Counted from the first letter of the stretch, positions 1-17,166 are shown. The stretch: DNA of 22,326 bases from Octopus sinensis (GCF_006345805.1 NW_021837015.1:1-22326); one strand, 5' to 3'. Notes: generated from the letters alone by a model not told the origin. A program made the numbers and translations.

Positions 1-31
1 TAAAAAGTAAAGGCAGGCCATTTCTATACAG

Positions 32-526
32 TTCCTACACAACGACCAGATGGGACATGGCGGAAGTCGGTCCGTGTCAAGGAAGGCTACATCCCCAGCG
101 AACAGGCCCCACGGTACAAAATAAATATAAGTGTGTAGTTATGAAAGCAAATACAAAAAACAAGAACGATTAAGATTAGAAAAGAATTCCATCCAACCAG
201 GATCTCAGGAATATCTGCAATACCAGCAGGATTCGTTAATTGAGGGACTGAATGACGCAATGAAAGATTTTAACATTTCCCGCGAAGTCCTCACTCAAAA
301 CACTCTACAATACCTCGGAAAGACCCAACAAAATAGATATAAACATCTGCTGAAAAAAATTGAGCATATTTCAGAACTAGAAGCGATGGATAGGAGTTCC
401 TTGGTGACTGATCAGCTGGCTATGATATGCAGGAAGAAGGAGATATTGAGGGAATTTGAATCCCTTAAGGCTCAGGCCATCCTCAAACGAAATTCGGAGC
501 AAACATCTGAGAAGGCTGCTATTTAA
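32..526 (+). CDS. PYM1: Partner of Y14 and Mago (PYM1/WIBG), exon-junction-complex disassembly factor; 5' end probably outside the window
   Basis: [27 protein letters not shown] / YESKYKK matches the PYM N-terminal signature ([26 protein letters not shown]). A 25-nt GT-AG intron at 114-138 joins it to ORF 131..526. The C-terminal [36 protein letters not shown] fits the PYM C-terminal helix. A further 25-nt intron at 7-31 is possible. Confidence 0.88.
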
Positions 527-815
527 TTTATTATGTTTTTGACGACATTTAAACCATTTTTTGTAAGTTATGTACTGTTTGTATATTTATATTCGATAAT
601 TTTTGAGAACACATTAGTACTACACAACGTATTGGATTTTAAATTTTTATTATTGAATTTTTATTACAAAATATAGTTATTCTAACTTTTAAGTATATTT
701 TTTCCGGTGCATTTTTAAAGTTATTGATTTTCATGTTTACGAAATCATTTAAATAGATGTAAAAAATTACTTTAATAAATTAATTTAAATAATTATTAGA
801 AATGTTCAGGTTGTA

Positions 816-2451
816 ATGATGCGATTTTTTGGTCCTGTTAATGAGGTTGATAAACTGTTGAGTTTTTTTAACAGATTAGAAAAAACTTGCCTCAAAACTG
901 TGAGGAAGTAGTTGAAAAAATATGGAAATCTCTAATTTCAGCAAACAATCACAACGCTTTATTAGATAAAATAGACAAGCATCAATTTAAACATTTATTC
1001 CTAACATCGATAGCCGAGAAAAGTACTATTTTTGCAGAATCTAAAGGAGCACTTTATGGCTTTAATGTTACCGTCAAAGACTCATATTGTGTGGCGGGAA
1101 TGAGGACCACGTGTGGATCGAAAACACTCAAAGACTTCAAATCACATTACTCTGCGAATTTAGTTAACAAATTACTCAAAAATGGAGCAATTGTTTCGGC
1201 AAAAACAAATTTGGATGAATTTAGTATGGGGTTTGCATTTTTTGACAATTTTGAAGAAGTGGGGGGGTCAGTAGTCATTTCGGCGTCGTCACCAATCCTT
1301 GGGACAAAAACAGAATTTGTGGGGGAAGCTCAAGTGGGAGCGCGGTCTCTGCACTTTTAGGAGTATCCACCATGTTGTTATATTTTTATATTTCTCAGTT
1401 CATTAGGAGAGGACACGGGAGGGTCGGTTAGACTTCCTGCTGCTTTTTGTGGAGTAGTTGGCTTTAAACCCAGTTTTGGAATTTATTCTCGTCATGGGTT
1501 GATCCCCTTGGCCAATTCACTTGACACTCCTTCCTTCATGTCACGCCATGTTTGCGATATTAAGTTATGTGCAAAAATATTATCCGATGGGCCTGATGGG
1601 GCGGATTTGACAATTTCTCGGGTTAAAAATCTATTTAGCAATGAATACTCTGACTGGTCCACAATCCGGGTCGGAGTCCTCGATCTTCGATTTGTCAAGG
1701 GAAATGCCGATTCTCAAGTAATTCGAGAGATTAACCGAATTGCTGAACTTATTGAAGGACATAATATTGAAATAGTCAACCAAGTAGTCCTACCTCACGT
1801 GGGTTTATCAAGTTTATGTTATGACGTCATTTGTTATTCTGACGTGTGCTCGAATATGGCCCGGTACGACGGTGTTCGATATGGTTGGGTACGGTAATTC
1901 ACGTTGTGAGGATTTTCATCACCAGAAATGACGGGCCACTTTGAGGATGAAATTTGTGTTAATCGGACAGCGTCTTTCGGGGAGAAAGTGAAGAAGCGCA
2001 TTATTGCCGGAAATTATTTTCTTTTAAAAGAGTTTAAACTTGCTAATGTTAATCCTAGGAACTACAAAAACTACTACGAGCAGGCCATGAAGGTTCGACG
2101 TCTTATTTCTGACGATTTTTCTCGTATTTTTGAGTTCGTGGATTTTTTACTGATGCCCACGACTACACATTTGCCCCCGACTTTTGCCGAATTTGAGGAG
2201 GCTGAGAAGAGTGGGATAGATTATGATATTTTAACAATCCCAGCAAATTTAGCGGGTTTTCCTCATGAGATTAAATGAAAGGGGTTCCCTCCATTTCAAT
2301 TCCATGTGGATTGTCGTCTGATGGACTTGCAATGTCGTGTCAGCTGATAGCTAGAAAATACGACGATTGTAGGCTTCTTGATTTTGCAGATTATGTTGCA
2401 AAGATTATTGATTTCAGTGGAAATTATGATCGTTTTAATAATTTGGTTTGA
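816..2451 (+). CDS. QRSL1: Glutamyl-tRNA(Gln) amidotransferase subunit A (GatA), amidase-signature family, 491 aa, 7 exons
   Basis: Exons 816-845, 875-1230, 1257-1373, 1399-1883, 1911-2031, 2059-2255, 2282-2451 total 1476 nt, in frame. Introns are 29, 26, 25, 27, 27 and 26 nt. Motifs VKDSYC, KTNLDEFSMG, NPWD..GGSSSGS, DTGGSVRLPAAFCGVVGFKPSFG, SNMARYDGVRYG, KRIIAGNYFLLKENY and PANLAGVPSISIP are present, and the K-S-S triad is intact. The first exon/start is less certain. Confidence 0.93.
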
Positions 2452-2633
2452 GTTGCAATTTTTAAAAATTTATATTTTTTTTAAAAATCTTCCGGTTCCT
2501 ATAACAAATGAGGTTTAACTGTATTTCAATTATAAAAACCATAGTTATGAGATAAAACTAAAAAATTAGTATATTATTAAGAAATTATTTTTTTTTAAAT
2601 ATTTTAAACATAAAGTTATTAACGTTCATTTGT

Positions 2634-4889
2634 ATGTCTTGTGTCGATGTATCAATCGAAACAAAAAGTGATTGATTTTATGAGAAATATTAGTTCAAAA
2701 TCTAATTGATGTTGGGTACTACAATATAGTCTCACAAAATGAAAAATTTTCAGATATTTTTGACGAGCCTGTCAGAAGGTTGAGAGCTGATCTCAGAAGT
2801 TCTATAAATTTCACAACTCTTACAAAGTTATTTATACTGTTAAAATTAAGAGAACAAATTGAATTATTTTACAAAAATATTAACGAGGAAGCCCAATTAT
2901 GGCGTCTTTTAATAAACTTGGAAGGGAAAAATTTTCAAAGTTCTATTCAGGTCGTATCATTATCACTCAATTCTAGGTAGCTATTAGATGGTTTGAGCAA
3001 AACTATTCGGTTTCTACAAACTCGGAAGATCTTGTTGCTGCCCTAAGAGCAAGTCGTCTGTATTCTATTGTTTTGGGATCTATAGATCTCCTAATTGCTG
3101 CAAATATGGTCCAGATTCCATTTTTCTTGATAAATTTGATCAGCATTTTGCACATGCTGAGGCATCTACTGCCAAAATATTGTTCGAATATGTCAGAGCG
3201 GGAAGAATTGAGGAGGTTGATCTTAAAAATTGCTAAAAAATCAAAAATAGGCTAAAAAGGCATGTTTAGAGGAGGATCCTTGGCGAGGGCTTTTATTAGA
3301 AGGCACCTCCTCTCTTTGGAGGAAGTGTTGTGCTGAATATACTATCCTTGTATTTTCTAGAATTTTCTATTTTATAGAAATCACTCTCTGATTACGAACG
3401 TGCCCTCTTTGGCGTCCTAACGGGGCAGTTCAAGGCAGTTCTTCCAGTGTGCAGTGACTGGGCTGACGCTACTTGGGCTGCACTGTGTTCACTAGGCACT
3501 GCTAGGCCCCTTTACGAGTACATTACCTGTTTTAATGATTTAATTTAGTGACACGATCAATGATAGTGCAACAATAAATAGGGATAATGGAAATGAATCA
3601 CTTGAATGGTTTGCTAACCTAGAAGTCTAATATTAGTTTGGATACGGTTAAGTGCTCTATTAAGGAGTTGGATGATCGTGGCTACTCAAATTCACTTGAG
3701 TTGTATTATATCATTAAATGCTCTAGGTTTGATTTGAAAAATATGCTAAATGAGGAAAATATGTCATGCTATAGACATGATATATCATTTAATTTGTTCA
3801 AATTGGTTTTCTTGGACTTTCAATCAGTCCAGTCTTTTATCGAACACAACATAGATCGGTTCAATTCGTCAGTTATTCGACTTGTACTTCATGTATTTCT
3901 CATAAGGGGAAAACAAGACAAGAATCTGATAGCAGTTCGGGATAATGATAATTTTAGACAAATGTGTTTCAGCTACTCTTGGATAAGAACATATCAAGGC
4001 TCCTTGATGACGGTTCCTGGCGTATTGCAGTGGGATATGTGCCATTTCTTAGTTTGGAAAATCAAATTAGCTCAGCTTGTCGAATCTACAGAGCAGCTAT
4101 TTCATTGCAAACTAGAAATGGGAGAACCTGTTTTGATTTGTGTCGCCAGAATAGACTTCCTGTGGTTGAGATAGGAATTGCCTTACTAAAGACATCCAAT
4201 GTTGTTACTTTCATTCATATCTTAGAGTATTGATATAGTGGATAATATGGAATGGATGTTGTTTATTCCGACTCATTTCCCCAGTTTGCTTCGAGTTCTT
4301 AACAATGTTTTGCTCAAATTCGTGCTTGATGACAATTTTTCTATTTTTCCGACCATTTTTAATCGACTGAGTTCGCATGATTTGTTCGGAGGATGTTTTT
4401 TGGATGAAAAAGAAACCCAGAAATATACTTTTTTTGCTACTTTAGTGGTGGGTCGTACCTGTTCATGAGTATTAGAAGTGCAGGACTGCCTATGACAAGT
4501 GGTTCGACTCCTGCCAAAAGGAATCCCCCGAGTTGACTACAGTTAACCATGCAATCGCATCCTTGTCAATAAACGACTTTTTGTCGACCGTATTTGATCC
4601 AGTTGAAGATGTTTTTGTATGGTTTAGTGAGATTGAGTAGGTAGGAGGGCGAGTTTGGTGTGGTTAGAGACACGTATGTTGTGGAGAATTGTTTTCGTCT
4701 GTTGCAAATGCATCAAGTAATGGGGAAGGACGCAGAGGTGTTTGACTTGGTGTCCTTGATTGCAGGAAATGACAAAATGTTGCACAAAGTTTATTAGAGT
4801 TTTATTATTTTCAGTTTTTTACCCAAGTGCAGGTCAGGGAGTTTATGGAAACTGTCAAATATTCTTTTTTTGGTGTTTCTATTTTATGA
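2634..4889 (+). CDS. NUP107: Nucleoporin Nup107/Nup84-like (Y-complex), shortened, at least 13 exons
   Basis: Exons 2634-2667, 2694-2950, 2977-3059, 3086-3215, 3251-3349, 3378-3517, 3549-3624, 3653-3934, 3958-4200, 4226-4447, 4476-4636, 4668-4788, 4815-4889 total 1923 nt, in frame. The spliced product gives KILFEYVRAGRIEEAKKAC..PWRGLLLEG..LWRKCC..YERALFGVLTGQFKAVLPVCSDWADATWA, DIVDNMEWMLF and LHKFFTQVQVREFM. These are colinear with Nup107 blocks ([47 protein letters not shown]). Extra introns at 2827-2850, 3727-3754 and about 3796-3827 are possible. Confidence 0.8.
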
Positions 4890-5019
4890 TTGGTCAATCT
4901 TTGTTTTTTTTATTATCTTTGGCTATTTTTAGCTTACATTTTCAATAGGTTAAGTTGCATCGGGTATAAGAATAAAGAGAATAGTGACTAATATTGAAAA
5001 ATAGGTGTAGTGAGCCTGA

Positions 5020-6255
5020 AGTTTCGGTTGACACAGGTTCAAAGAAAAATCTGTCCAATAGAGATCCGTATTTATTTTGCGAATCTCCCTTTTTTTTGTT
5101 GCTGTGTAGGCTTAGGTCGCAGACGTGAGAAGACATGTTGACGCAAAACTGTCGGAGCATGTCGCATCCAATCACTTTTACAGAAAAGCTAGACGCCGTC
5201 TATCCTCTTACCGTCTTTCCTGGTAAGACCAGAGGGAGGCACGGGATATTGGCTGCCTCAATCAAACGTTTTACAATGCTATTAAGCTCCGCGTGCCTTG
5301 CGATTCTCTCATGGTTATTACAAGAAACCTGGTGTAGACCTATGCGGTCTAATCTAGATTCTTTCTCTCCCCTCTGGATTGCTCAGGACGAAGAGCTAGC
5401 ATTCGGCACATCTTTGTGGACAGCTAGCGGACTTAAACTCAAGTGGACTTTCTCATCGATTGCCGGAGAAAAAAGAAAGGAGCAGAGTGGGTCGCCCTGT
5501 TGTACACCGGTGGCAGAAATAATGGTAGAAGAGCTAGAAATAAAAAAAGGAGAGCTGTAGGTTTAGAGCACGAACCCATAAATTGTTGGGCAACGAAAGA
5601 AGCAAGATTACAGCAAAGAGTCACGGTGAACATTGTTAAATGCGTAAGTTTGACTATGGGTTGTTAAATCTCGGTCACAAAACATATGGCAGTATCCACC
5701 GGTGTTTCAAGCTTAAGGGAACCATGACTCTAAGCTGTAGCTAAAGAAAAGCTTTTGAGATTTCCAGGAAGGAGGATTAGCATGCAAGCATTAAAGCTAG
5801 GCAGCGGAAAACGTCTCCGACGGCGATTTGGACGTACACCGCCATTTTTTGGAAAAAAGAACCTAGATAGGCGGAGAAAATGAGTCCACGAGCGGAAGCA
5901 GATAAATCTGAAGATAAAAGGTTGTTGACTAGTTCCCTGATCGAGGTAAGGAGCAGCGAGCCTGTTGGGCCGATCACTAGGGAAATGAGGTTTCAAGGGT
6001 GACTTAGGCGGAGACCCTCAATGCCTGCACTACTCCTACACGAAAAAGTATTGAGAGCTCGACAAATTGCATCGTTAGTGAGTCTCAAAAAGGAGGCCGT
6101 GGATTTTATGGATGGAAATGACCTGAGGTTTGCAGGTGCGGGAGGGTGTTTGCTCTTCAATGTGTTGATTACATTTTTAGTTAATGAAAGTATGCCTACC
6201 ATTGGAGGCCAGAACTCTTATTGCTGCTCTGGTGTCACCCTCGATCAGTTTTGAC
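5020..6255 (-). mobile_element. Degenerate CRE-clade (RLE-type) non-LTR retrotransposon, copy 1, internally deleted
   Basis: Minus-strand motifs in order: KLIEGDTRAAIRVL, LKSKHPPAP, SSAGIEGLR, KNGGVRP(I)AVGDVFR, GVQQGDPLCSFLF, GLHQVSC..RHAELNSIVKRLI, RKDGKRIDG, (W)DATCSDSFA, KYGSLLDRFFFEPVSTETSG. Contains stops and frameshifts. Confidence 0.85.
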
Positions 6256-6269
6256 ATGATACGGGGACA

Positions 6270-6485
6270 GAGAGGATCGGTATCAATCCAACGAAATCCA
6301 TTCCCGTTGGTTAAAACGTAGAACTGAGCATCCATTTCAATCTCTGATTGAGTCGTTTAACTTATTCCTGTATCCAAGTACGTCTGGGTTTCCCCCTGAC
6401 ATGACGAATTTTAAATTCTTCATACAACTTCATCATCTGTGAGTTGCAAAACTCAAGTCCATGATCAGTATTAATTATGAAACTA
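6270..6485 (-). pseudogene. DDE retroviral-type integrase (rve) core fragment, Ginger/SCAND3-KRBA2-like or LTR-retrotransposon derived
   Basis: Minus translation IINTDHGLEFCNSQMMKLYEEFKIRHVRGKPRRTWIQE*VKRLNQRLKWML matches the rve pattern (SDNG.EF.N..I.HVRG.PR..QSQG.VER.NQ). It carries a stop, and the catalytic E is changed. Confidence 0.7.
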
Positions 6486-6764
6486 TGCAAACCGTTATTC
6501 AAACACCACACTGACTACACTGACACTGACCAACCATAAGCATCTTGAACTTAGCTTTGACCCAACCATGTCCTTAAACAAACATGTCTCAAACATCTCG
6601 GACAAAGAAAACAGGCGTACAAACATTCTACAAATAATAAGTGGTCACATCACTGGTGCCCAGAAACCACTCCTCAAACGATTCTACAAATAAAACATCC
6701 GCTCCGTTCTGAGCTACGCAAGTCCGAGCTGGACCCCCTGTCTATCTGCAAGCTTTATTGGGAG

Positions 6765-6785
6765 AATTGGGAGAATTGGGAGAAT
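6765..6785 (+). repeat. 9-bp unit (TTGGGAGAA) triplicated at the SINE 5' junction (array about 6759-6785)
   Basis: TATTGGGAGAATTGGGAGAATTGGGAGAAT is directly visible. Only one unit is needed to restore the host LINE frame. Confidence 0.85.
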
Positions 6786-7220
6786 GGCCCCGTTGGCTGA
6801 AGACTAAGCTATGGATAATGGATTTGGACAGTCGTGAGTTCGATTCCGAAGGAGGACAGTTTTCATCCTGGGGCTAATTCTCGTTATCGTTCCCCTGCCC
6901 GTGAGGCAACGAGTACTTCTGGCACGACACAGTTGGAAATGGGGATCTCTTACCTTTCGGGCTTAGCGTGGCGTTATGGGGTCCACCATGTCAGTTGGAG
7001 AATTTCAATCGGATATGGCAACGCTCAGGAGGCACTTAATGCCTACCGAAAAAGGACCTTTAGCTCTCAGACCCTGGGACATCGTCGTCTCAGGCCGATC
7101 ATGCGGGCAGGATCGAACCTTTCAGAAGGATCTCCCTCGTTTGGATCGGCGATCACGGGAATAACTATAATTAACTGGCTTTGCCCGTGTTTGGTCTTTA
7201 AAAAAAAAAAAAAAAAAAAA
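6786..7220 (+). mobile_element. tRNA-derived SINE, about 435 bp, with poly(A) tail
   Basis: The 5' end GGCCCCGTTGGCTGAAGACTAAGC is tRNA-like with an A-box-like sequence. A B-box GTTCGATTCC lies at 6838-6847. The body is about 330 nt and GC-richer than the flanks. A CACGGG/CCCGTG stem (7154-7159/7184-7189) precedes an A21 tail (7200-7220). It interrupts a LINE reading frame. Confidence 0.8.
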
Positions 7221-7354
7221 TACAATCAGTTCTAAACAAGGCTATACGATTATATCCGGGTGTCTGAAATACACACCTAACGATCACCTGTACTGCGAAA
7301 CCAATCTTTTCCCGATAAAAGAACATTCAAATATAAGAGAAGCACAATTTTTAT

Positions 7355-8815
7355 TCGTTTCGCGTAAATCTTATTACCCTTGGAAAACGAAGCTGGAGAA
7401 GTAACCGTTTTTCAGGATTTTGAGATCTTCAGCGCAATTGGAAGCAAAGCCTGGGTCGACGGGCGATATGGCTAGGTTCCCGTTGGAGAATGTGTCACAG
7501 CAGGTAGAATCCCATATAAGGGATTTCCCCTGCTCGAAGGGGAATGTAGTTAAGCCGTCAAGGCGTTTGCCGTCAACTCTGTCCAAATAGAAATCAGATA
7601 GAGGCAGGAGAGGGGATGTATTCCGAACTCGTCCACAGTTCCACCACAGCGACATTTATGAGCCTGACAGATTTTAAGCCCGACACGTAAGGAGATCTCG
7701 ATTCCTAGGCACTCCGAGTCCAAGAGGTTCCCAATGGAGATTGCATAGGGAACTCATACCGAGCTTAAGGATGTAATCGAAATCAGATAGGAAGTCACTT
7801 CTGTAGAAACAGGGTGCACATCTTAGCGTAGTACAAAGGGCTTTAGGGACGGAAAAGTGATTTCGCAAGAGGAAAAATGCTACATGAGGCTCGATGTTTT
7901 TAAGCCTCTCGATCATTTTAGAGAGATTCAATATTTTTTTCCGAAAATAAACCTTCTAGAGCGGAAAGACCCATGGGTACCCCAAGGATGGATAGATTAG
8001 ACTTTTCGGTAATACGAACGTCTGGAAAAATATTGTGGCAAATGGAAGAGGCAGCAAAAAATAAACTTTGATGGAGGTGGATATTCATTATTTCGAATTT
8101 ATTTGCATTAATGGATAGGCCAATTGCCGAAAGGGATGGAAGGATAGTCCGGAAATCATCAAAAACTACTTCGGGAGGACCATAAATAGTTGCGTCGTCC
8201 AAATACCAAATGTTTACCGGGGATCGGACAGAATGGGGGATGCCATTAACGCCTAGTGCGAAAAGCACAGGACCAAGTGCAACCATTGGAAACGCCGACA
8301 CCAAGTTGAGCGGGCAGAAAGTTTGGAGACAAACAGGGAACAATGGCATGACAGAGAAGCTTAGCGGAGAGCCTCCGGGAAACATTTCCCACAGCGATGG
8401 GTCTTACGCCGTTGTCCTTCTTCCCGAGGGCAGTAAGGTTTGCAGAAAAGAAGATACCGCGAGCAAAGTCAGGAAGCGAACCGGAGATAAAACGGTTGCA
8501 GAGATTGGTAATTGAGCGTAATAGTTTCCGCTCAGCTTCTGCGGTCATAGAAGAAGTCAAGTTTTTTATATGAGTAGCCCTAATATGAAGACTTACTCGA
8601 CGAACCATTTGTTCTTTGTCAACGATCTTAAAACTACTTGCATTTTTCCTGAAGAGGGCGGGGATCCTGCAATCAATTAAAACAAATAAATTGCATTTAC
8701 TAACGATCGCGGGATTTCTTGCCTCAAAATATGGTACTGAAAGCGGAGAAAACATCTGTGATGAGTCTATAAAAATCGCTCAGATGAATTGGTTAATGAA
8801 GAAGACTGAATGAAA
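7355..8815 (-). mobile_element. Degenerate CRE-clade non-LTR retrotransposon, copy 2
   Basis: ORFs 8246..8755 (LTALGKKDNGVRPIAVGNVSRRLSAK..QLGVGVSNGC), 7918..8385 (GPVLFALG..IWYLDDATI..LSILGVPMG), 7674..7931 (HVAFFLLRNHFSVPK..LRCAP) and 7374..7655 (RVDGKRLDGLTTFPFEQGKSLIWDSTCCDTF) cover RT and the REL endonuclease. Part of the RT core is deleted. Confidence 0.92.
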
Positions 8816-8859
8816 ATTTTTGCATTCTATATTATTCAAATGCCTGAATGATTAGAATG

Positions 8860-9975
8860 TTTATGTAGAAACCTCAAGCGGGTAGCTCCCAGAAGTGAAG
8901 CATTTTATTGCCTACTACAGAATAGAAACCTGTTTTTTTCAACCAAGCGAGCATTGTGCAACTATTTCGTAAGAGACAAAAAAACCGTTAGTCATTTGGA
9001 AACTCAGTATGGAAAAATGCTCAACAGTGATTATGTCAGGAGACAAAAAATGTTGCAATACGCGCCGATTCTTCAATAATTACAGACACGAAAATTCACA
9101 TATATTCGTCCACGACAAAATGAAAAACGAAATTACTCTCATCAAAGTGGGAATCACTTCCCAGGACCGCCTGAAGCAAGGCGAAGTTGAGAAATGCCAT
9201 AAATTATTGTCCGGGGAGTTGTCCAGCCTATACCCTAAAGTAAAAATACTTTCACTGGTTCTGATCTGGGACGGTGTCGTTTCCAAGTTTTTCAAGAAAT
9301 ACATTAAAAAGTTGGCTATCGAAGACGGAACTCGGACTTACATACAGTCAGTTGTGTTAGAGAAAACACTGGACAGTGTGGTGGTTGAACACAGACACGG
9401 AATAAATTAAGCCAGTAGCCTCATAATTGAAGCAAGTCGTTTGTATGAAGAAGATATAGAAAGTGGGGAAAAAGAAGCTGTAACTGATTTAGTTAGTTAG
9501 TTATGTTATCCCGGCTTCACTAACACGTAGGAAGCCGGCTGCAATCAGGTAGCGAGACGCGAAGATCGGGCGCTCCCAGAGATCCCGAATCCCAATAGGC
9601 GGAGACAAGTGAGGCGGTCCAGGACAGGGGAAGAGGTCTTCGGGGGTGAAGGAACGGTATGTTTCGAAAATCAGTGGATGATGACCTGAGCGAATCTGAG
9701 CAAGCTGGACACGGAGATATCTGCCGAGTGATTGCTCTGAGGAGTGGACCGGCGGGGGGGGAGAGTTGAGAAGTTTGTTGTTTTTGAGCATCCTGATAGC
9801 ACGAGTGGAGATGTGGTCATGGATTAGTTTATTCGCAGTTTTCCCATTGTTGGTTGAGAGTATTTTTGATAGACATCTACATTGATCGTAACTGATTTAA
9901 TGACAGAGGATAAAGAAGTAGTGTTGGTTACTTCTTTCTCTAAAAGAAGAAAATATTATATTTAATAAAAAAAAA
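8860..9975 (+). mobile_element. 3' part of an RLE-type (R2/NeSL-like) non-LTR retrotransposon, interrupted at 9492-9887(+TSD)
   Basis: RVAPRSEAFYCLLQNRNLFF..KKTVSHLETQYGKMLNSDYVRR is a decayed CCHC knuckle. It is followed by HIFVHDKMKNEITLIKVGITSQDRLKQGEVEK..LVLIWDGVVSKFFKKY..YIQSVVLEKTLDS (PD-(D/E)xK endonuclease). The frame resumes after the insert as ..AVTDL|MTEDKEVV..KYYI** and is followed by an A-run at about 9966-9975. Confidence 0.8.
9492..9887 (-). mobile_element. 5'-truncated I-group LINE 3' end with 12-bp target-site duplication
   Basis: IHDHISTRAIRMLKNNKLLNSPPPPVHSSEQSLGRYLRVQLAQIRSGHHPL..PCP..RDLWERPIFASRYL matches the C-terminus of I-group LINE ORF2. The tail is (CTAA)n. GTAACTGATTTA occurs at both 9480-9491 and 9888-9899. 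Confidence 0.85.
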
Positions 9976-9989
9976 ATTAAGAAGAAAAT

Positions 9990-10760
9990 TAATCTTCGTC
10001 CTCAGCCGACGAAGAAAAAAAAGCGATTCCTGATGATGACCCCGAATATCTCAACGTCTATAGGTGCAAATATATGGTTTCTGGCCAGGGACAAGGATTT
10101 CTTTTTTGGCGAGCTCCGCGTGTTTTGCTGCCGAATCAGGCTCAGCAACTGCCGAAATTAGATTATGTGCTGAAAATCTGTCGGAGCATGTCGCGTCCCA
10201 TATGAGGAATTTTTCGTGATCAAAAAGAAATGTTATCATGCCATCTGAGCGTTTTCCATCTTCGCGATCCAACACGACCGAATTCAGCACATTAGGGAAT
10301 CCCGCAGATGCCAGGACGCGGCTCACCACATCATTAAACCCAGAGTGGAGAGGGAAGCGGCCAGCGCTACGACGGCAAGATAGCGGGTGTAGTCCTAAGG
10401 TGTTTGTCTAACTGCAGCCGCATTGATGCTTATGGCAAATGTTTAATCCCAAGCGCAGGAAAACTGCGATGCAGAGGCATTCATTATCCAGTAATGTCCC
10501 GACTGACGCCATAGCCAGCCAGGCTCCTGAATACTTTTGGGACCTTGCAAACAGACAGGTCAGGCGGTGTTGATCAAGTTTACACTTGAAAAGCAAAAAC
10601 TTGTAATCGGAATAAATTGCGTCCCATCCCCGCTATCTGGTCAAATAATCAGGTTTATTCAAGGCCATTTGGGGATCAGCATCCTACAGCCGAAGAGAAC
10701 TCAGAGTCCAAGGGCAATTCAATGTAATTGTCTTACCTGCTGTTTATGATTTCAGATTTA
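9990..10760 (-). mobile_element. Degenerate CRE-clade non-LTR retrotransposon, copy 3 (3' half)
   Basis: QKYSGAWLAMASVGTLLDNECLCIAVFLRLGLNICHKHQCGC, VSRVLASAGFPNVL..LDREDGKRSDG..LIWDATCSDRFSAH..AAKHAELAKK. Confidence 0.9.
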
Positions 10761-10879
10761 TGGTAATTGTCCACAACTTATTTACTGACTGTGTACACGT
10801 CAGACCGAAAAAATCAAACTCAAGCTAACTCAAGAATATTAAAATTTATAATTTGTGGCAAAAAGTGCATTTCTAGACC

Positions 10880-12270
10880 AAAATTACGTTTTATACGTTT
10901 AACCCCATAAAGGCAGTAAGCGAATCGTCCTCAAGGAAGTTGTACGGATACTTAACCCGCTCTTCTGCGAATCTACTTTTTGTCGATGCCTGAATGAAAG
11001 TGGAGGTGAGGTTTTCTGCAAATCCTGGTTTCCTTTGGTGATTTTTGTTTTTTGTAAAATGTTCCACCGGTGGTAAACATATTTCCAAAACCAAATTTTT
11101 ACTTTTTATATTATTTAAACAAAAGACCGCAGTAAAAACCGAAGGGTCGTCTCTTGGTCTACCAGGTTTCAGTATCAGCCTTATTAGTGCTTGTATGCAA
11201 ATATCCAACACTTATTTTACCGAGAAAAGAAGAGGTGCCGACTGTTTTTTAAATCTTTTGTTTGAGAGTAGTGTGTCTGATTTCCTGTGCTTCTTGTGTG
11301 TTACTTTTGCATAAAAACTTTGTTAGGTTATTTACCTTCTTTGAACATATTCTCCTGTAAATGTGATTACGTCGCCCGTGCAAAATGGCCTTCCACACAT
11401 CTTCAGTTGATCGGTTCACGGATCGATTTCGGTTCACGGCTCTAAGAACCAGATTCCGTTTTAAACACTTATATCGATTTTTTCTAGCCTTTAATTCGCT
11501 ATTCAATGTTCTGATACTGATGATTATATCCGAATTCATTTGGTAAAATTTCTTGAGGCGATTTCTTTACTTGGCAAAGGCAGACCTCCTTCAACCACTA
11601 GCAGAATGAGGTTCAAGTTTACATATGGCCATTGCTTTTGTTTCCATAATTATTTTCGTGAAGTAGCTGATGGCCTTGTCCAGAGAGCTGAACTTTCCCA
11701 GATGCTAATTGATCTCAGAGTCGGTTTTAGCATAGGTAAGGACATCAGAGTCGGTTTTAGCATTGTGTCGTGGGAATCGCAGCTCGGACGTCACTTTTGG
11801 CTCGTTTGATATTGTCACATTTCCGGACAGTATGAGATGTTCTTTTTATTCTTTTGAAGACGTTTGTAATTAGCATCTGGGAAGGTTGTTATTGGGTGCA
11901 AAGTCAGTTGATGTTTTTTGATCAATGTCGAGAAAAAAAGTGGGTTCCTCCCAGTGCGGATAGAGGTTCCAAAGCTCAAGTGGAGCAAAGCTGATTAGAC
12001 GAGACCATGCTTCGCAGTAGTCTGACGTAAGCGCATAGCTAATGAAGAGAGAGAGGCATGTGGACACCTGTATCCTGACGGAATTGGGAATCCATAGGGG
12101 AATTTTCAAAGAACCTCGGAAATCTGATAGTTTAATAAGAAACGACCAGAGGGTGATTATTAGCCCAAGTTGGAAAAATAAATGAGAATAAATAAATGTT
12201 TTGAGCGTTATTTTTGCTGCACTATAAAGTACTATGGCTCTCGTGATAAGGCTAATAATAATCAAATATT
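10880..12270 (-). mobile_element. Highly decayed Jockey/I-like LINE (possible endonuclease remnant, linker, RT N-terminus)
   Basis: LILKPGRPRDDPSVFTAVFCLNNIKSK..HF..KPGFAENLTST resembles the RT pattern PKPGKP..P.SYRPISLLN..SK..Q.GFR...ST. The upstream LDKAISYFTKII..RNRLKKFYQ..VWKAI resembles the EN-RT linker. The endonuclease part (11870-12270) is weak. Confidence 0.55.
11715..11763 (+). repeat. Local tandem duplication (19-nt identical core, 30-nt period)
   Basis: TCAGAGTCGGTTTTAGCAT occurs at 11715-11733 and 11745-11763. Confidence 0.9.
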
Positions 12271-12833
12271 CATTTGAGCTGTATTATTAATAACCAAGTA
12301 CAGTCAAACCCCAGTAAGTCTCCACCACACTTACTCGCCACCTATTTGCTTGGCCGGAATCTAACTGTTCTCTTGCATGCTCGCAGATCGAGCTTGTTTT
12401 TTTGATTTTTTTCTTTCGAAAAAGAATATACTCACAAAAATGAATGTGGCGTGTATTCAACTTTTTCATTAATAGCTTCGTAAATGTCTTCTTAAATAAT
12501 TAAACATTTCGACTTTCTTTATTTTTGAATACGTATTTAAGAATTAAAAATTCAGAAATCGCGGATGTATGCCATCTTTTAATTATCCACAGAATGTGAC
12601 TTGCTCAGGTGTATTGAAGAATTTTTTAGATTCCCCAAAAAATGGAACATCATTAGTTTATTTTTGAAAAACAGGTAAGTCAGTCCTCTTCCAAAATCTT
12701 TTTTGCGTAAATTCTATTTTTTAAAAGATTTAAGTGTGGTTTGGCGCAACAAGCAAATGTTTAATTGCAGAACACCTCTGGACCTGACATATCTCATTCA
12801 AAATTAAGTTTATTAGTATCATCAATAAAAATG

Positions 12834-14457
12834 TTAATTTATTATGATGTAGAGACCCGTAGACGGGAGTGTGACAAAAATATCTGAAGAAATATTATTT
12901 GGCCTGTAATAAGAATCCATCACACTTTCCACAAACGAGTCAGCAAGATGACTGGGCACAAGTGACACACAACACCCACCCCATCCAGCTCCTGTCAAAC
13001 GACTCCCCAGAGCACCCGAAGCACTAAAATACCTTTCAACCACTCAAACCGACAAGAAGCGACTAATTCATCTAAAAGAGGACAACTACAGTCATAAAAC
13101 ACTGAACAGCTGTGGTGACTCTCATCCATTAACAACCCCAGTCTCTGAGCCACTTTCTCACTCGAACAAACATCTTCAGTTGCCTCCAAAAATTCCCTAA
13201 CTCTCAAAGCCTCCCCAAAAACATGCATCGACCGAGAAAAAAGATCAAACTCCACGACTTGTATTTTAAACGACACAAAAACCATGTCCCAGATTTGAGG
13301 GCAAAACCCGCTCGATGAGGTCGCCTTCCTCCATTTCAAGCTCAGAAGCAATTTCGGCACGTGTGTAGCAATACGTGTGGAACTCACTTTTAACGATATC
13401 AATCATTTCTTCTAAAGTTGAACCTAACAGAATTTGAAGACTGGCCAATTTCGTAATTGGTGATTTCGACTTTCGTTTAGAAATAAGCTAAAAATAAATT
13501 TTGACGTAAAAACAGACCATTGCTGCTAAACGGCACTCAGCGACTCGAGTGTTGAATTGAAAAGTGGCAGCTTTATTCATTTTAACACCAGAATTGGCCA
13601 CCACAAAAGACATTCCTTTAGGAAGGGTCACTAAGGATGTCCTCAAAGGGTCAAATTCAATCGAACATGCCAAAAATGACAAAAATTTTTTACAGAGCCT
13701 GAAGTTGATAGGAATGACGCCGCCTGATCCATTCCCCCTCCTTGGGTTCCAATCAATCTCTCAAACTGACCGCATAAATCAGCTAAATTATTCTATTAAT
13801 AAATAATAATTAATTCAAACTAATTAATTAATAATAGTAATTAACAATAAATAAATACCGCAGAAATTTCCTGTGGGGAAAACATGTGATAGATTACTAC
13901 TGCCGAAGCACACACTAGGGCACTCGAACTCGAAAGGCCAGCTGATGGGGGAATATCTCCATCCACCAAAATCTAAATTTAAAATCAAAAAAAACTACAT
14001 CAAGTCCATTTGGTAGTACTTCTAGTTCAAGGTACCGAGACATGCCAATGAGCCCACACAACACGTAATCAGCCCAGCCTTGATTTGTCAAGACAAGTTT
14101 GTCGGTAGTGGTGTAATGATCTCTGAATTATTCAATAAACAAAAAACGGATATAAATCTGTTTTAGTGTTCGAAATGTTTATTTGAGACATTTGGTTGGT
14201 GGAGACAGCCACAATGGCACACTGTTCAATGGCCATGGGACACACGCCGTACCCACAGTAGTCAATGTGCTCGCCTGTAAATTTGGCAGAGATTTGTACC
14301 GATGAGGTTGACCCGCCCTGGGGCTCTCACGAAGAATTGAGGGGGATGTTGGTAGCGAGTATAGAATGATTTTGATAGTTTGTTCATTCTATTATTTATT
14401 TATTTTTTAATGCCTTGGTGTGTCTTGATATGATTGTTTTGGAATTGTGTGGGCCAT
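12834..14457 (-). CDS. GALK2: N-acetylgalactosamine kinase / galactokinase 2 (GHMP kinase), 450 aa, 10 exons
   Basis: Exons 14457-14414, 14388-14300, 14274-14148, 14122-13999, 13972-13859, 13792-13694, 13670-13518, 13487-13283, 13257-13050, 13023-12834 are in frame. Motifs [91 protein letters not shown] and [12 protein letters not shown] are of the GALK2 type. The model needs a GC-AG intron (14413-14389) and a GT-TG intron (13693-13671). Confidence 0.92.
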
Positions 14458-14599
14458 TATGGTCAGAATGTCAAATTAATTTATTTAAATTTAAAATATT
14501 TTATAATATATTAAATGTATCATTAAATTCTTTAGATTAAATATACTGTATTAAAATAAATTTGATTAATAAAACTTTTTTTTAATTATTATTTTTGTT

Positions 14600-14795
14600 T
14601 ATATATAGCCGTCAAATTAAACTAAAATTAAAGATTTATTCAGGGGTTATAGCCCAGCCGAACGGATTGCTTGCGTTCCCACGCACGATTGTAAGCGAGA
14701 TCCTGCCTCAACCAAGAGGACTCGCGAGCATCCATTTTCTTCCGAGCAATGAGGATGCCGAGGTCTTTTATGAAGCATGAGGTGAGCGGACCTAT
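14600..14795 (-). mobile_element. CRE-clade 3' terminal fragment, copy 4
   Basis: GPLTSCFIKDLGILIARKKMDARESSWLR, then after a frameshift RISLTIVRGNAS. This is the typical CRE C-terminal FIKDLG..ES.WL.QRIS.AI.RGNA pattern, followed by an A-rich tail. Confidence 0.8.
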
Positions 14796-15211
14796 TTTTA
14801 AAACTATTTTTTTAATTCCCATCGTCCATTATATTTTATCAAGATCTCGTAAAAGCGAATTAATGCTTTTCCAGTTTGGAAAAACAGTCGACTATCTTTC
14901 TGAGGAGGTCGGGTATTTTGCGAGTAATTAAAACAAGAGAATGACACTTATCCACAATCGCAGAATTTCTTGCCCTCGAAAATCTGAACATTGATTCACT
15001 CCAAGAAAACTTTTGCTTAACAGAACCATCCTAAATCACTCGGTGGTGTATAAATGTATGAAGGCAGAGCCACTAAATACAGTCCACACTTTTTGCTCGC
15101 CATATTTTTCAAAAAAGAACTTTTAAGTTTGTCCATTTACGTTTATCCACGACAACCGCGGGACAAGTATTAAATAGTGAATATAGCATTTATATATGGG
15201 AGAGTATAGAT

Positions 15212-15284
15212 CAGGGGTGCGCAAGTGCGGCCGTGAGTCGATGAATGTGCGGCCGTGGGCACAATTATGTCATCGAGCAACTAA
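15212..15284 (+). mobile_element. Probable hAT (Charlie/Tip100-like) left terminal inverted repeat, orphan end
   Basis: CAGGGGTGCGCAAGTGCGGCCG follows an 8-mer GTATAGAT resembling the NTCTARAN hAT target. The subterminal GTGCGGCCGTG is repeated twice. I found no matching right end in the window. Confidence 0.5.
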
Positions 15285-17065: not shown

Positions 17066-17166
17066 ACAGTCGGTTTATGAAACACGCCGTTAATGAAACG
17101 CCAGCATCAAATTAGAAAAAAAATTGATTTTGTCGATAAAAAATTTATAAATTGACAAATACCTGG

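What the first reader, a model, noticed from the sequence alone, without database searches (positions are those of the whole stretch)
114..14413. Near fixed-length micro-introns with almost no splice-site consensus
Of 28 introns modelled in four genes, 27 are 23-35 nt and 20 are 25-28 nt. The +3 donor base is a pyrimidine in 16 of 28, and all six QRSL1 introns start GTT, whereas GTR is the norm. Acceptors include AAG (1256, 2281, 3652, 13258) and GAG (1910), and I see no constant branch-point motif. Inference: intron length may act as a ruler for the spliceosome, possibly with altered U1/U6 pairing. Very short introns are known in dicyemids, ciliates and nucleomorphs. The standard code and animal-like intron positions here favour a dicyemid-like animal.
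Basis: partly seen in the sequence, partly recalled or inferred. Interest (0 to 1): 0.7.

Follow-up and report, generated by a model that had tools for sequence, protein, structure and literature searches.

The report
Dicyemid-type micro-introns in an octopus contig
The roughly 26-base introns are real, but they are the already-described hallmark of dicyemid parasites, and this "Octopus sinensis" contig is almost certainly DNA of such a kidney parasite that ended up in the host's genome assembly.

Summary
Four genes (PYM-like, QRSL1, NUP107, GALK2) carry 28 GT-started introns. 27 are 23-35 nt and 20 are 25-28 nt, with a median of 26. Homology-guided boundary enumeration fixes 13 of the 14 QRSL1/GALK2 introns. 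12 of those 14 sit at the same position and phase as ordinary introns (45 nt to 14 kb) in oyster, polychaete, chiton, water flea or octopod orthologues.

Beyond GT and AG the signal is weak but not absent. Donor +3 matches intron background. The last exon base is G in 50% of cases. Acceptor -3 is a pyrimidine in 82%. An A-rich zone lies at -9..-7, followed by a short T run.

The window is the whole GenBank contig VCDQ01009472.1 of the Octopus sinensis assembly. O. sinensis is the host from which Dicyema japonicum was collected for genome sequencing. The genes are only about 40% identical to cephalopod orthologues. Uniform ~26-nt introns at conserved positions, and reduced splice motifs, are published for dicyemids (2007, 2019, 2026).

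Verdict: already known. The ruler and U1/U6 ideas remain untested. By-products are a contaminated host assembly, a mis-modelled RefSeq protein and a possible GT-TG intron.

The parts
1..526 (+). PYM-like (Mago-binding) gene, 5' end cut by the contig start; stop TAA at 524-526
   Evidence: Pfam Mago-bind, E 4.6e-10; model; stop codon
7..31 (+). PYM intron, 25 nt, GTAAAG..TACAG (tentative; only 6 nt of the upstream exon lie in the window)
   Evidence: Sequence reading and table
114..138 (+). PYM intron, 25 nt, GTACAA..TGTAG, phase 2
   Evidence: Joins 'EQAPR' to 'YESKYKKQ' in frame; retention gives a premature stop
816..2451 (+). QRSL1 (mitochondrial Glu-tRNA(Gln) amidotransferase subunit A) coding region, 491 aa, stop TGA
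   Evidence: Best hits are animal QRSL1 at 41-42% identity, E 1e-97; scores 480 bits against the family HMM
846..874 (+). QRSL1 intron 1, 29 nt, GTTGAT..AACAG, phase 0. Ambiguous: 857-879 (23 nt) and 837-874 (38 nt) score the same; all start GTT
1231..1256 (+). QRSL1 intron 2, 26 nt, GTTTGC..TGAAG (AAG acceptor), phase 2
   Evidence: Rank 1 of 645 boundary pairs; same column and phase as introns in chiton, Daphnia and Argonauta
1374..1398 (+). QRSL1 intron 3, 25 nt, GTTGTT..CTCAG, phase 2
   Evidence: Rank 1 of 866; position conserved
1884..1910 (+). QRSL1 intron 4, 27 nt, GTTGGG..GTGAG (GAG acceptor), phase 1, with an in-frame TAA
   Evidence: Best GT-AG candidate by 10 bits; same column and phase as chiton and Argonauta introns
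2032..2058 (+). QRSL1 intron 5, 27 nt, GTTTAA..CCTAG, phase 2; the only intron whose retention keeps the frame open
   Evidence: Removal gains 14 bits over retention; rank 2 of 929; position conserved
2256..2281 (+). QRSL1 intron 6, 26 nt, GTTTTC..GAAAG (AAG acceptor), phase 1
   Evidence: The only GT-AG candidate, rank 1 of 654; position conserved in chiton and Argonauta
2634..4889 (+). NUP107/Nup84-family nucleoporin coding region, 638 aa, stop TGA
   Evidence: Pfam Nup84_Nup100, E 4e-25, collinear over residues 146-629 and profile positions 143-714; weak hits to NUP107 structures
2668..2693 (+). NUP107 intron 1, 26 nt, GTGATT..ATTAG (not testable by homology; a 17-nt alternative exists)
   Evidence: Frame logic
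2951..2976 (+). NUP107 intron 2, 26 nt, GTCGTA..TCTAG (a 23-nt alternative, 2954-2976, exists)
3109..3143 (+). NUP107 intron 3, 35 nt, GTCCAG..ATCAG
   Evidence: Shortest frame-compatible GT-AG candidate; the next is 53 nt
3216..3250 (+). NUP107 intron 4, 35 nt, GTTGAT..AATAG
   Evidence: Pfam score 92.0 against 83.5 for the 44-nt alternative
3350..3377 (+). NUP107 intron 5, 28 nt, GTATTT..TATAG
   Evidence: The only GT-AG candidate
3518..3548 (+). NUP107 intron 6, 31 nt, GTACAT..TTTAG (the 19-nt alternative 3548-3566 is only 1.3 bits worse)
3625..3652 (+). NUP107 intron 7, 28 nt, GTCTAA..TTAAG (AAG acceptor). Ambiguous: 3609-3636 (28 nt, TAG acceptor) ties, and 3625-3664 (40 nt) scores 4 bits better
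3935..3957 (+). NUP107 intron 8, 23 nt, GTTCGG..TTTAG
   Evidence: 3.2 bits better than the 38-nt alternative
4201..4225 (+). NUP107 intron 9, 25 nt, GTTGTT..CTTAG (the 22-nt alternative 4204-4225 scores 1.2 bits better)
4448..4475 (+). NUP107 intron 10, 28 nt, GTGGGT..ATTAG
   Evidence: 7.6 bits better than the 31-nt alternative
4617..4644 (+). NUP107 intron 11, 28 nt, GTATGG..GGTAG (the 31-nt alternative is 1.1 bits worse)
4789..4814 (+). NUP107 intron 12, 26 nt, GTTTAT..TTCAG
   Evidence: 12 bits better than the 38-nt alternative
12834..14387 (-). GALK2 (N-acetylgalactosamine kinase) coding region, 435 aa, stop TAA
   Evidence: Aligns over residues 3-433 with human GALK2 structure 2a2c, E 1.3e-113, with no gap at any splice junction; scores 543 bits against the family HMM
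14275..14299 (-). GALK2 intron 1, 25 nt, GTACAA..TACAG, phase 1
   Evidence: Rank 1 of 908; same column and phase as oyster and Capitella introns
14123..14147 (-). GALK2 intron 2, 25 nt, GTTTTT..TTCAG, phase 2
   Evidence: The only GT-AG candidate; position conserved
13973..13998 (-). GALK2 intron 3, 26 nt, GTAGTT..TTTAG, phase 0; the only GALK2 intron not matched in oyster or Capitella
   Evidence: Best GT-AG candidate by 5 bits
13793..13858 (-). GALK2 intron 4, 66 nt, GTATTT..AATAG, phase 0; the length outlier, made of AT-rich short repeats
   Evidence: Best GT-AG candidate by 10 bits; position conserved; internal 13/28-nt repeats
13671..13693 (-). GALK2 intron 5, 23 nt, GTAAAA..TTTTTG, phase 0; ends in TG, not AG
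   Evidence: Removing exactly these 23 nt scores 543.0 bits, against 522.3 for the best GT-AG alternative. The alignment to human GALK2 is gapless across the junction. Same column and phase as oyster and Capitella introns. Sequence re-read
13488..13517 (-). GALK2 intron 6, 30 nt, GTCTGT..TTTAG, phase 0
   Evidence: Best GT-AG candidate by 6 bits; position conserved
13258..13282 (-). GALK2 intron 7, 25 nt, GTTTTT..ACAAG (AAG acceptor), phase 1
   Evidence: Best GT-AG candidate by 6 bits; position conserved
13024..13049 (-). GALK2 intron 8, 26 nt, GTTTGA..TTTAG, phase 2
   Evidence: Best GT-AG candidate by 7 bits; position conserved

Best explanation
These are ordinary U2-type (GT-AG) spliceosomal introns. 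They were inherited at ancestral animal positions and have shrunk to roughly the smallest size a spliceosome tolerates (mode 25-26 nt). They belong to the genome of a dicyemid mesozoan, probably Dicyema japonicum or a co-infecting Dicyema species, whose DNA contaminated the Octopus sinensis assembly.

Shown: the introns exist, their boundaries, their conserved positions, the weak flanking signals, and the contig's provenance.

Inferred: when the 5' splice site, branch point and 3' splice site all lie within about 25 nt, the intron is recognised as one unit and little sequence information is needed. What remains is G|GT at the donor, an A-rich zone 7-9 nt upstream of the 3' end that would serve as branch point, a run of about 4 T, and YAG. 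The narrow length distribution would then reflect deletion pressure stopping at a steric minimum, not a dedicated measuring device.
For: Real introns:
- 28 segments start with GT, and 27 of them end in AG. Retention causes a premature stop for 26 of the 27 tested.
- An enumeration of all boundary pairs, blind to dinucleotides and scored with family HMMs, puts the models at rank 1-9 of 457-929 pairs for 13 of 14 QRSL1/GALK2 junctions.
- The spliced GALK2 aligns with human GALK2 with no gap at any splice junction (E 1e-113).
- 7 of 8 GALK2 introns and 5 of 6 QRSL1 introns share column and phase with introns of 45 nt to 14 kb in Crassostrea, Capitella, Liolophura, Daphnia or Argonauta.

Residual signals:
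- Exon -1 is G in 14/28 (p=0.001). Acceptor -3 is a pyrimidine in 23/28 (p=0.005).
- A is enriched at -9..-7 (p=0.002), and 27 of 28 introns have an A at -10..-6. T is enriched at -6..-4.
- Hadjez et al. 2026 describe the same weak A stretch upstream of the 3' AG, and 'GTa'/'AG'-only logos, for D. japonicum.

Dicyemid origin:
- The window is contig VCDQ01009472.1 (22,326 bp) of the O. sinensis assembly GCA_006345805.1.
- D. japonicum was collected from O. sinensis (Lu 2019).
- The octopod QRSL1 is a 31-kb gene with introns of 397-14,190 nt and is only 40% identical.
- Median intron length is 26 nt here, against 26.2 +/- 1.9 (Aruga 2007) and 27 (Zverkov 2019).
- GC is 38% and about half the window is LINE or satellite repeats, against 36.7% GC and 49% repeats in D. 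japonicum.
- The top named GALK2 hits are bivalves, so a lophotrochozoan affinity.
Against: - No dicyemid reference sequence or RNA-seq was available, so species identity and actual splicing are inferred.
- The protein searches found no close relative. The best hits were 41-49% identical, apart from the mis-modelled protein from this contig itself.
- Donor +3 shows no excess of A (9/28, which equals background), whereas the published D. japonicum logo is summarised as 'GTa'.
- One intron lacks the AG that a fully conventional mechanism expects.
- Six NUP107 boundaries are not uniquely determined, and NUP107 intron positions could not be compared with orthologues (one search found nothing).
Confidence: 0.85

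Rival explanations
1. Length-ruler splicing with altered U1/U6 pairing. The spliceosome of this organism picks the 3' site mainly by distance from the 5' site or branch point rather than by sequence, and its U1/U6 snRNAs have changed to accept any base at +3 to +6.
For: - The length distribution is very narrow (20 of 28 introns are 25-28 nt).
- Donor +3 and +6 equal intron background.
- A conserved-position intron ends in TG at the usual distance, with an A at -7.
- Hadjez et al. 2026 report that the weak A stretch lies further from the AG in longer introns. I read that as a branch point nearer a fixed distance from the 5' end.
Against: - 27 of 28 introns still end in AG, and 23 of 28 have a pyrimidine at -3.
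- A 66-nt and two 35-nt introns exist, so length is not obligatory.
- Hadjez et al. found canonical U2 branch-point-interacting regions and U2AF in the analogous myxozoan case.
- A lower bound plus deletion bias explains a narrow distribution without a ruler.
- No snRNA gene is in the window, so nothing here speaks to U1/U6.
Confidence: 0.12
2. The contig comes from another short-intron organism, not a dicyemid: a myxobolid myxozoan, or a ciliate or apicomplexan parasite of cephalopods (Chromidina, Aggregata).
For: - Myxobolids have median introns of 22-27 nt with equally reduced splice motifs.
- Ciliates such as Paramecium have 20-35-nt introns.
- No dicyemid sequence was available for direct comparison.
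Against: - The contig is from an octopus assembly, and myxobolids alternate between annelids and fish.
- The best hits of QRSL1 and GALK2 are bilaterian animals, with bivalves on top for GALK2 at 44-49%. No myxozoan is among the named hits in the top 120 of either search.
- 12 of 14 intron positions are animal positions.
- TAA and TGA are used as stops. From general knowledge, the oligohymenophorean ciliate code reads TAA as glutamine.
- LINE-rich repeats fit D. japonicum, whereas myxozoans are described as having relatively few transposable elements.
Confidence: 0.04
3. The contig is genuine octopus DNA, either native genes or a block transferred from the parasite into the host genome.
For: It is deposited and RefSeq-annotated as Octopus sinensis (XP_036356206.1).
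Against: - It is a separate 22-kb contig with no octopus-like gene on it.
- Its QRSL1 is 40% identical to the octopod Argonauta orthologue, which spans 31 kb with kb-scale introns.
- All four genes are intact housekeeping genes with dicyemid-type introns.
- NCBI's gene finder could not model them.
Confidence: 0.03
4. The short segments are not spliced at all. They would be assembly indels or the frame disruptions of decaying pseudogenes.
For: One segment lacks AG. The contig may have had low coverage.
Against: - All 28 disruptions start with GT, 27 end with AG, and 27 are 23-35 nt long.
- They coincide with ancestral intron positions and phases.
- About 4.7 kb of exon sequence has no other frameshift or stop.
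Confidence: 0.01

Closest known systems
Dicyemid micro-introns (Dicyema acuticephalum, Aruga et al. 2007, PMC2222250; D. japonicum, Lu et al. 2019, PMC6736024, and Ogino et al. 2010 as cited in PMC6543705; Dicyema sp., Zverkov et al. 2019, PMC6543705; splice logos in Hadjez et al. 2026, PMC13644364)
   Same: - Uniform length around 26 nt.
- GT-AG ends.
- Positions conserved with other animals.
[quoted passage not shown]
- A weak A stretch upstream of the AG.
- An AT-rich, LINE-rich genome.
- An octopus host (O. sinensis).
   Different: - In this 28-intron sample, donor +3 shows no excess of A (T 13, A 9), whereas the published logo is summarised as 'GTa'.
- One intron ends in TG.
- The sequence is filed under the host's name.
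- Identity to a named Dicyema species was not tested.
Myxobolid myxozoan ultra-short introns (Henneguya salminicola, Thelohanellus kitauei, Myxobolus spp.; Hadjez et al. 2026)
   Same: Median length of 22-27 nt. Splice motifs reduced to GT(a) at the 5' end. A weak A run as putative branch point. A parasitic, reduced animal.
   Different: Cnidarian lineage with fish and annelid hosts. H. salminicola has 29% GC and no mitochondrial genome, which would leave a mitochondrial QRSL1 without an obvious role. Relatively few transposable elements are reported. The proteins here look bilaterian or lophotrochozoan, and the contig comes from an octopus.
Ciliate introns (Paramecium 20-35 nt, Stentor 15-16 nt) and Bigelowiella nucleomorph introns (18-21 nt)
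   Same: A near-fixed minimal length and a conventional spliceosome retained despite tiny introns.
   Different: Not animals. Gene content, intron positions and (from general knowledge) the genetic code differ. The length classes are tighter and shorter.
TG 3' splice sites in human U2-dependent introns (Szafranski et al. 2007, PMC2374985)
   Same: A U2-type intron using TG instead of AG at its 3' end, as GALK2 intron 5 would have to.
   Different: In human they are described as alternative 3' splice sites. Here there is no frame-compatible AG that preserves the conserved protein, and the nearest downstream AG is about 30 nt away. Splicing is unverified.

Membership tests
Dicyemid (Dicyema) nuclear genome / dicyemid-type micro-introns | Intron length tightly clustered near 26-27 nt | tested here: met
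   Median 26; 20 of 28 introns are 25-28 nt. Published values: 26.2 +/- 1.9 and median 27.
Dicyemid (Dicyema) nuclear genome / dicyemid-type micro-introns | GT-AG ends with strongly reduced flanking consensus | tested here: met
   GT in 28/28 and AG in 27/28. Donor +3 and +6 equal background. Only weak signals at exon -1 (G), at +4/+5 and at -3 (pyrimidine). This matches the description.
Dicyemid (Dicyema) nuclear genome / dicyemid-type micro-introns | Introns at positions conserved with other animals | tested here: met
   12 of 14 QRSL1/GALK2 introns share column and phase with mollusc, annelid, arthropod or cephalopod introns.
Dicyemid (Dicyema) nuclear genome / dicyemid-type micro-introns | Association with a cephalopod host | tested here: met
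   The window is contig VCDQ01009472.1 of the O. sinensis assembly. D. japonicum was sampled from O. sinensis.
Dicyemid (Dicyema) nuclear genome / dicyemid-type micro-introns | Divergent bilaterian (spiralian) protein sequences | tested here: inconclusive
   The best hits are animals at 41-49% identity. Bivalves top the named GALK2 hits, but fish and corals follow closely. No tree was built.
Dicyemid (Dicyema) nuclear genome / dicyemid-type micro-introns | High nucleotide identity to a sequenced Dicyema genome or transcriptome | not testable with these tools
   No dicyemid genome or transcriptome is in the searchable collections. The protein searches returned no close relative.
Myxobolid myxozoan micro-introns | Cnidarian/myxozoan affinity and a fish or annelid host | tested here: not met
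   The contig is from an octopus assembly. No myxozoan is among the named hits in the top 120 of either search, and the top named hits are bilaterians.
Ciliate short introns | Ciliate gene content and (for oligohymenophoreans) TAA/TAG read as glutamine | tested here: not met
   TAA ends PYM and GALK2, and TGA ends QRSL1 and NUP107. The genes are of metazoan type with metazoan intron positions.
U12-type (minor spliceosome) introns | Extended donor (A/G)TATCCTT and a TCCTTAAC branch site | tested here: not met
   None of the 28 donors has TATCC at +2..+6 (table).
Cephalopod (octopus) nuclear genes | High identity to cephalopod orthologues and kb-scale introns | tested here: not met
   40% identity to Argonauta QRSL1, whose introns are 397-14,190 nt, against 25-29 nt here.

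The most novel reading that the evidence does not exclude
In dicyemid micro-introns the 3' splice site is chosen largely by its distance from the branch point or 5' end. On this reading an intron whose AG has mutated to TG (GALK2 13693-13671, at an ancestral intron position, with an A at -7) is still removed precisely. That would be a natural case of AG-independent, distance-defined 3' site selection in an animal.
Probability: 0.12. Interest if true: 0.6.

Novelty: already known. Interest (0 to 1): 0.25.

Why it matters
For splicing biology the window adds little. Uniform ~26-nt introns at conserved positions have been reported for dicyemids since 2007, and their reduced splice-site logos were published in 2026.

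The practical points are these:
1. A public host genome (Octopus sinensis, GCA_006345805.1) contains parasite contigs.
2. At least one RefSeq/UniRef protein, XP_036356206.1 ('N-acetylgalactosamine kinase-like [Octopus sinensis]'), is a chimeric mis-model of a parasite gene. Such entries can mislead comparative and horizontal-transfer studies.
3. Contigs of this kind are a free source of dicyemid sequence.
4. The GT..TG intron at a conserved position is a concrete case for asking how 3' sites are picked in minimal introns.

Tried and rejected
- QRSL1 intron 4: I first considered the alternatives 1893-1910 and 1893-1925, which seemed to have a better GTAAT donor. Re-indexing showed they start with GG (the GT is at 1894) and are out of frame. 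The 27-nt GTTGGG..GTGAG model is best by 10 bits.
- GALK2 intron 5: the canonical alternative GTCATT..TTCAG (20 nt, 13718-13699) is rejected. It costs 20.7 bits, removes the conserved 'MDQxxS' serine and moves the intron off the conserved position.
- GALK2 intron 8: the 20-nt alternative is 7 bits worse.
- Hidden in-frame introns in QRSL1 and GALK2: no candidate improves the HMM score.
- Depletion of lengths divisible by three (4 of 28, p=0.02): not claimed. Such introns without stops are hard to detect in NUP107, and the unbiased QRSL1+GALK2 subset has 4 of 14.
- NUP107 homologue search: no hits, so its intron positions could not be compared with orthologues.
- Rfam and tRNA scans of the window: nothing found, so U1/U6 could not be examined.
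- Supplement of Hadjez et al. 2026: not held, so exact D. japonicum base frequencies at +3 are unknown to me.
- 'All six QRSL1 introns start GTT': p is about 0.011 under the intron T frequency, which is not compelling after allowing for post-hoc choice.

Full report
**What is in the window.**
The window is eukaryotic DNA with 38% GC. Six-frame reading shows coding frames that switch or hit a stop every 100-500 nt on the + strand at 1-4890 and on the - strand at 12834-14387. Joining the frames across short GT...AG segments gives four proteins:
- a PYM-like Mago-binding protein (Pfam Mago-bind, E 4.6e-10);
- QRSL1, the mitochondrial Glu-tRNA(Gln) amidotransferase subunit A (best hits are animal QRSL1 at 41-42% identity, E 1e-97);
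- a NUP107/Nup84-family nucleoporin (Pfam Nup84_Nup100, E 4e-25, collinear over profile positions 143-714);
- GALK2, N-acetylgalactosamine kinase (residues 3-433 align with human GALK2 structure 2a2c, E 1.3e-113).

Stops are TAA (PYM, GALK2) and TGA (QRSL1, NUP107). The rest of the window (about 4900-12800 and 14600-21100) is repeats. It holds three decayed reverse-transcriptase fragments, a 95-nt satellite in 18 copies and a poly(A)-tailed element.

**Check of the observation.**
My independent models give 28 introns with these lengths: 23, 23, 25 (seven), 26 (seven), 27 (two), 28 (four), 29, 30, 31, 35, 35 and 66 nt.
- All six QRSL1 introns start GTT.
- The AAG acceptors end at 1256, 2281, 3652 and 13258, and the GAG acceptor ends at 1910.
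- Donor +3 is A 9, C 4, G 2, T 13.
- One intron (7-31) lies outside the stated range.

**Are the boundaries right?**
I built family HMMs from the homologues found. At each QRSL1 and GALK2 junction I enumerated every frame-preserving boundary pair within +/-30 nt, whatever its terminal dinucleotides.
- The models rank 1-9 among 457-929 pairs at 13 of 14 junctions.
- At the 12 canonical junctions among these, the model is the best GT-AG choice by at least 3.8 bits.
- QRSL1 intron 1 lies in an unconserved N-terminus and is ambiguous (23, 29 or 38 nt, all starting GTT).
- Removing the in-frame 27-nt segment 2032-2058 gains 14 bits over keeping it.
- No further in-frame intron is hidden in these two genes.

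For NUP107 the homologue search returned nothing, so I scored alternatives against Pfam.
- Introns 4, 8, 10 and 12 are favoured by 3-12 bits.
- Introns 3 and 5 are, respectively, the shortest and the only frame-compatible GT-AG candidate.
- Introns 6, 7, 9 and 11 have near-equivalent alternatives of 19-40 nt.
- Introns 1 and 2 lie outside the region matched by the profile.

Retaining any of 26 of the 27 introns tested gives a premature stop.

**Conserved positions.**
I fetched the genomic loci of orthologues and mapped their exons exactly.
- Seven of the eight GALK2 micro-introns fall in the same alignment column and phase as introns of Crassostrea virginica (225-1,961 nt) and Capitella teleta (45-540 nt).
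- Five of the six QRSL1 micro-introns match introns of the chiton Liolophura sinensis and of the octopod Argonauta hians. Three also match Daphnia pulex.
- The matches include the GTT..GAG intron, the AAG-acceptor introns and the in-frame intron.

This confirms 'animal-like intron positions'. Together with the phase agreement, it is the strongest evidence that these are true spliceosomal introns with the stated boundaries.

**How little consensus is there?**
Compared with the intron interior composition (A .30, C .10, G .13, T .47), donor +3 and +6 are indistinguishable from background (p=0.73 and 0.82). Positions +4 and +5 show a weak excess of G (p about 0.03). Some signals do remain:
- The last exon base is G in 14/28 (p=0.0013).
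- Acceptor -3 is a pyrimidine in 23/28 (p=0.005).
- A is enriched at -9..-7 (38/84 against 160/571 elsewhere, p=0.002). This corresponds to +16..+20 from the 5' end.
- 27 of 28 introns have an A at -10..-6.
- T is enriched at -6..-4.

There is no fixed branch-point motif, but there is a positional A zone followed by a very short T run and YAG. So 'almost no consensus' is essentially right, though slightly overstated. The run of six GTT donors in QRSL1 has p of about 0.011 under background T frequency and was noticed post hoc, so I do not give it weight.

GALK2 intron 5 (13693-13671, GTAAAAAATTTTTGTCATTTTTG) ends in TG.
- Removing exactly these 23 nt gives a gapless alignment with human GALK2 through '[13 protein letters not shown]|ACSIEF'.
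- It scores 543.0 bits, against 522.3 for the best canonical alternative.
- It sits at an intron position and phase shared with oyster and Capitella.

Three explanations remain open: a TG 3' site is used, the allele is defective, or the consensus carries an error. TG 3' sites have a human precedent as alternative sites (PMC2374985). About 4.7 kb of flanking exon sequence shows no frameshift, which makes a consensus error at exactly this dinucleotide unlikely a priori.

**Where the window comes from.**
The GALK2 search returned 'N-acetylgalactosamine kinase-like [Octopus sinensis]' (XP_036356206.1, 352 aa) on a contig of exactly 22,326 bp. The look-up identifies the window as GenBank VCDQ01009472.1 of assembly GCA_006345805.1.

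That RefSeq protein is a mis-model. It has a retroelement-derived N-terminus, read-through into introns (for example a C-terminal '...GHGFCVV') and skipped conserved exons.

The contig's genes are not octopus genes. The octopod Argonauta QRSL1 is 40% identical, spans 31 kb and has introns of 397-14,190 nt.

Octopus renal sacs harbour dicyemids, and D. japonicum was collected from O. sinensis for genome sequencing. Published dicyemid features match the window:
- 7 genes with 16 introns of 26.2 +/- 1.9 nt at conserved positions (Aruga 2007);
- a median of 27 nt (Zverkov 2019);
- 36.7% GC and 49% repeats with many LINE copies (Lu 2019);
- splice motifs reduced to 'GTa' and 'AG', with a weak A stretch upstream of the AG (Hadjez 2026).

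The only other animals with such introns are myxobolid myxozoans. They have fish and annelid hosts, and nothing in the similarity data points to them.

**Mechanism.**
The best-supported reading is conventional U2-type splicing of minimal introns. Shown here are GT at the 5' end, AG at the 3' end in 27 of 28 cases, the residual G at exon -1, the pyrimidine at -3, the A zone and the T run. Inferred is that having all signals within about 25 nt lets the intron be recognised as one unit with little sequence information, and that deletion pressure has pushed lengths to a steric floor.

The 35-nt and 66-nt introns show that length is not strictly required. The TG-ending intron, and the published observation that the A stretch lies further from the AG in longer introns, keep a distance-based component possible.

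**Verdict.**
The taxonomic inference is supported, and sharpened to parasite contamination of a host assembly. The mechanistic speculation is untested. The phenomenon itself is already known, so interest for splicing biology is low. The useful by-products are the contamination and mis-annotation finding and one candidate GT-TG intron.

Noticed in passing
whole window (1-22326): The window is the complete GenBank contig VCDQ01009472.1 of the Octopus sinensis assembly GCA_006345805.1, yet it carries dicyemid-type genes. This looks like parasite contamination of a host genome that is also in RefSeq.
   Followed up: yes
window 13266-18864 (locus L001 3463-9061): RefSeq protein XP_036356206.1 / UniRef100_A0A7E6EKQ3 ('N-acetylgalactosamine kinase-like [Octopus sinensis]', 352 aa) is a chimeric mis-model. 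It has an N-terminus from the retroelement region, read-through into micro-introns and skipped GALK2 exons. QRSL1, NUP107 and PYM appear not to be annotated, at least in the part of the contig that was returned.
   Followed up: partly
13671-13693 (- strand): A GALK2 intron at a conserved position ends in TG instead of AG. No frame-compatible AG preserves the conserved protein, and the nearest downstream AG is about 30 nt away. It could be a real non-canonical 3' site, a defective allele or a consensus error.
   Followed up: partly
15353-17065: A tandem satellite with a 95-nt unit in about 18 copies at 92% identity, with higher-order periods of 283 and 378 nt. Each unit carries C- and A-runs.
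   Followed up: no
7921-8403 (-), 17826-18140 (-), 20095-20421 (+): Three decayed non-LTR retrotransposon reverse-transcriptase fragments (Pfam RVT_1) with frameshifts and stops. Related 'DGKR.DG...F..L.WD.TC.D.FS' ORFs lie at 7377-7655 (-) and 10054-10407 (-). This fits the LINE-rich D. japonicum genome.
   Followed up: partly
6757-7225: A 9-nt microsatellite (ATTGGGAGA, 3 copies), followed by a sequence with a tRNA-like B-box (GAGTTCGATTCC) and ending in a 21-nt poly(A) at about 7200-7221. It looks like a SINE, although ARAGORN finds no tRNA.
   Followed up: no
13793-13858 (- strand): The single long intron (66 nt) is almost pure A/T and is made of 13/28-nt internal repeats (TRF). It looks like a micro-intron expanded by local duplication.
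   Followed up: no
8973-9407 (+): An ORF annotated in GenBank as a 133-aa gene with no Pfam hit. It lies inside the retroelement region and is probably not a host-type gene.
   Followed up: no
5129-5200 and 10150-10200: A shared 'CTGTCGGAGCATGTCGC' core in two places, suggesting two copies of one repeat family.
   Followed up: no
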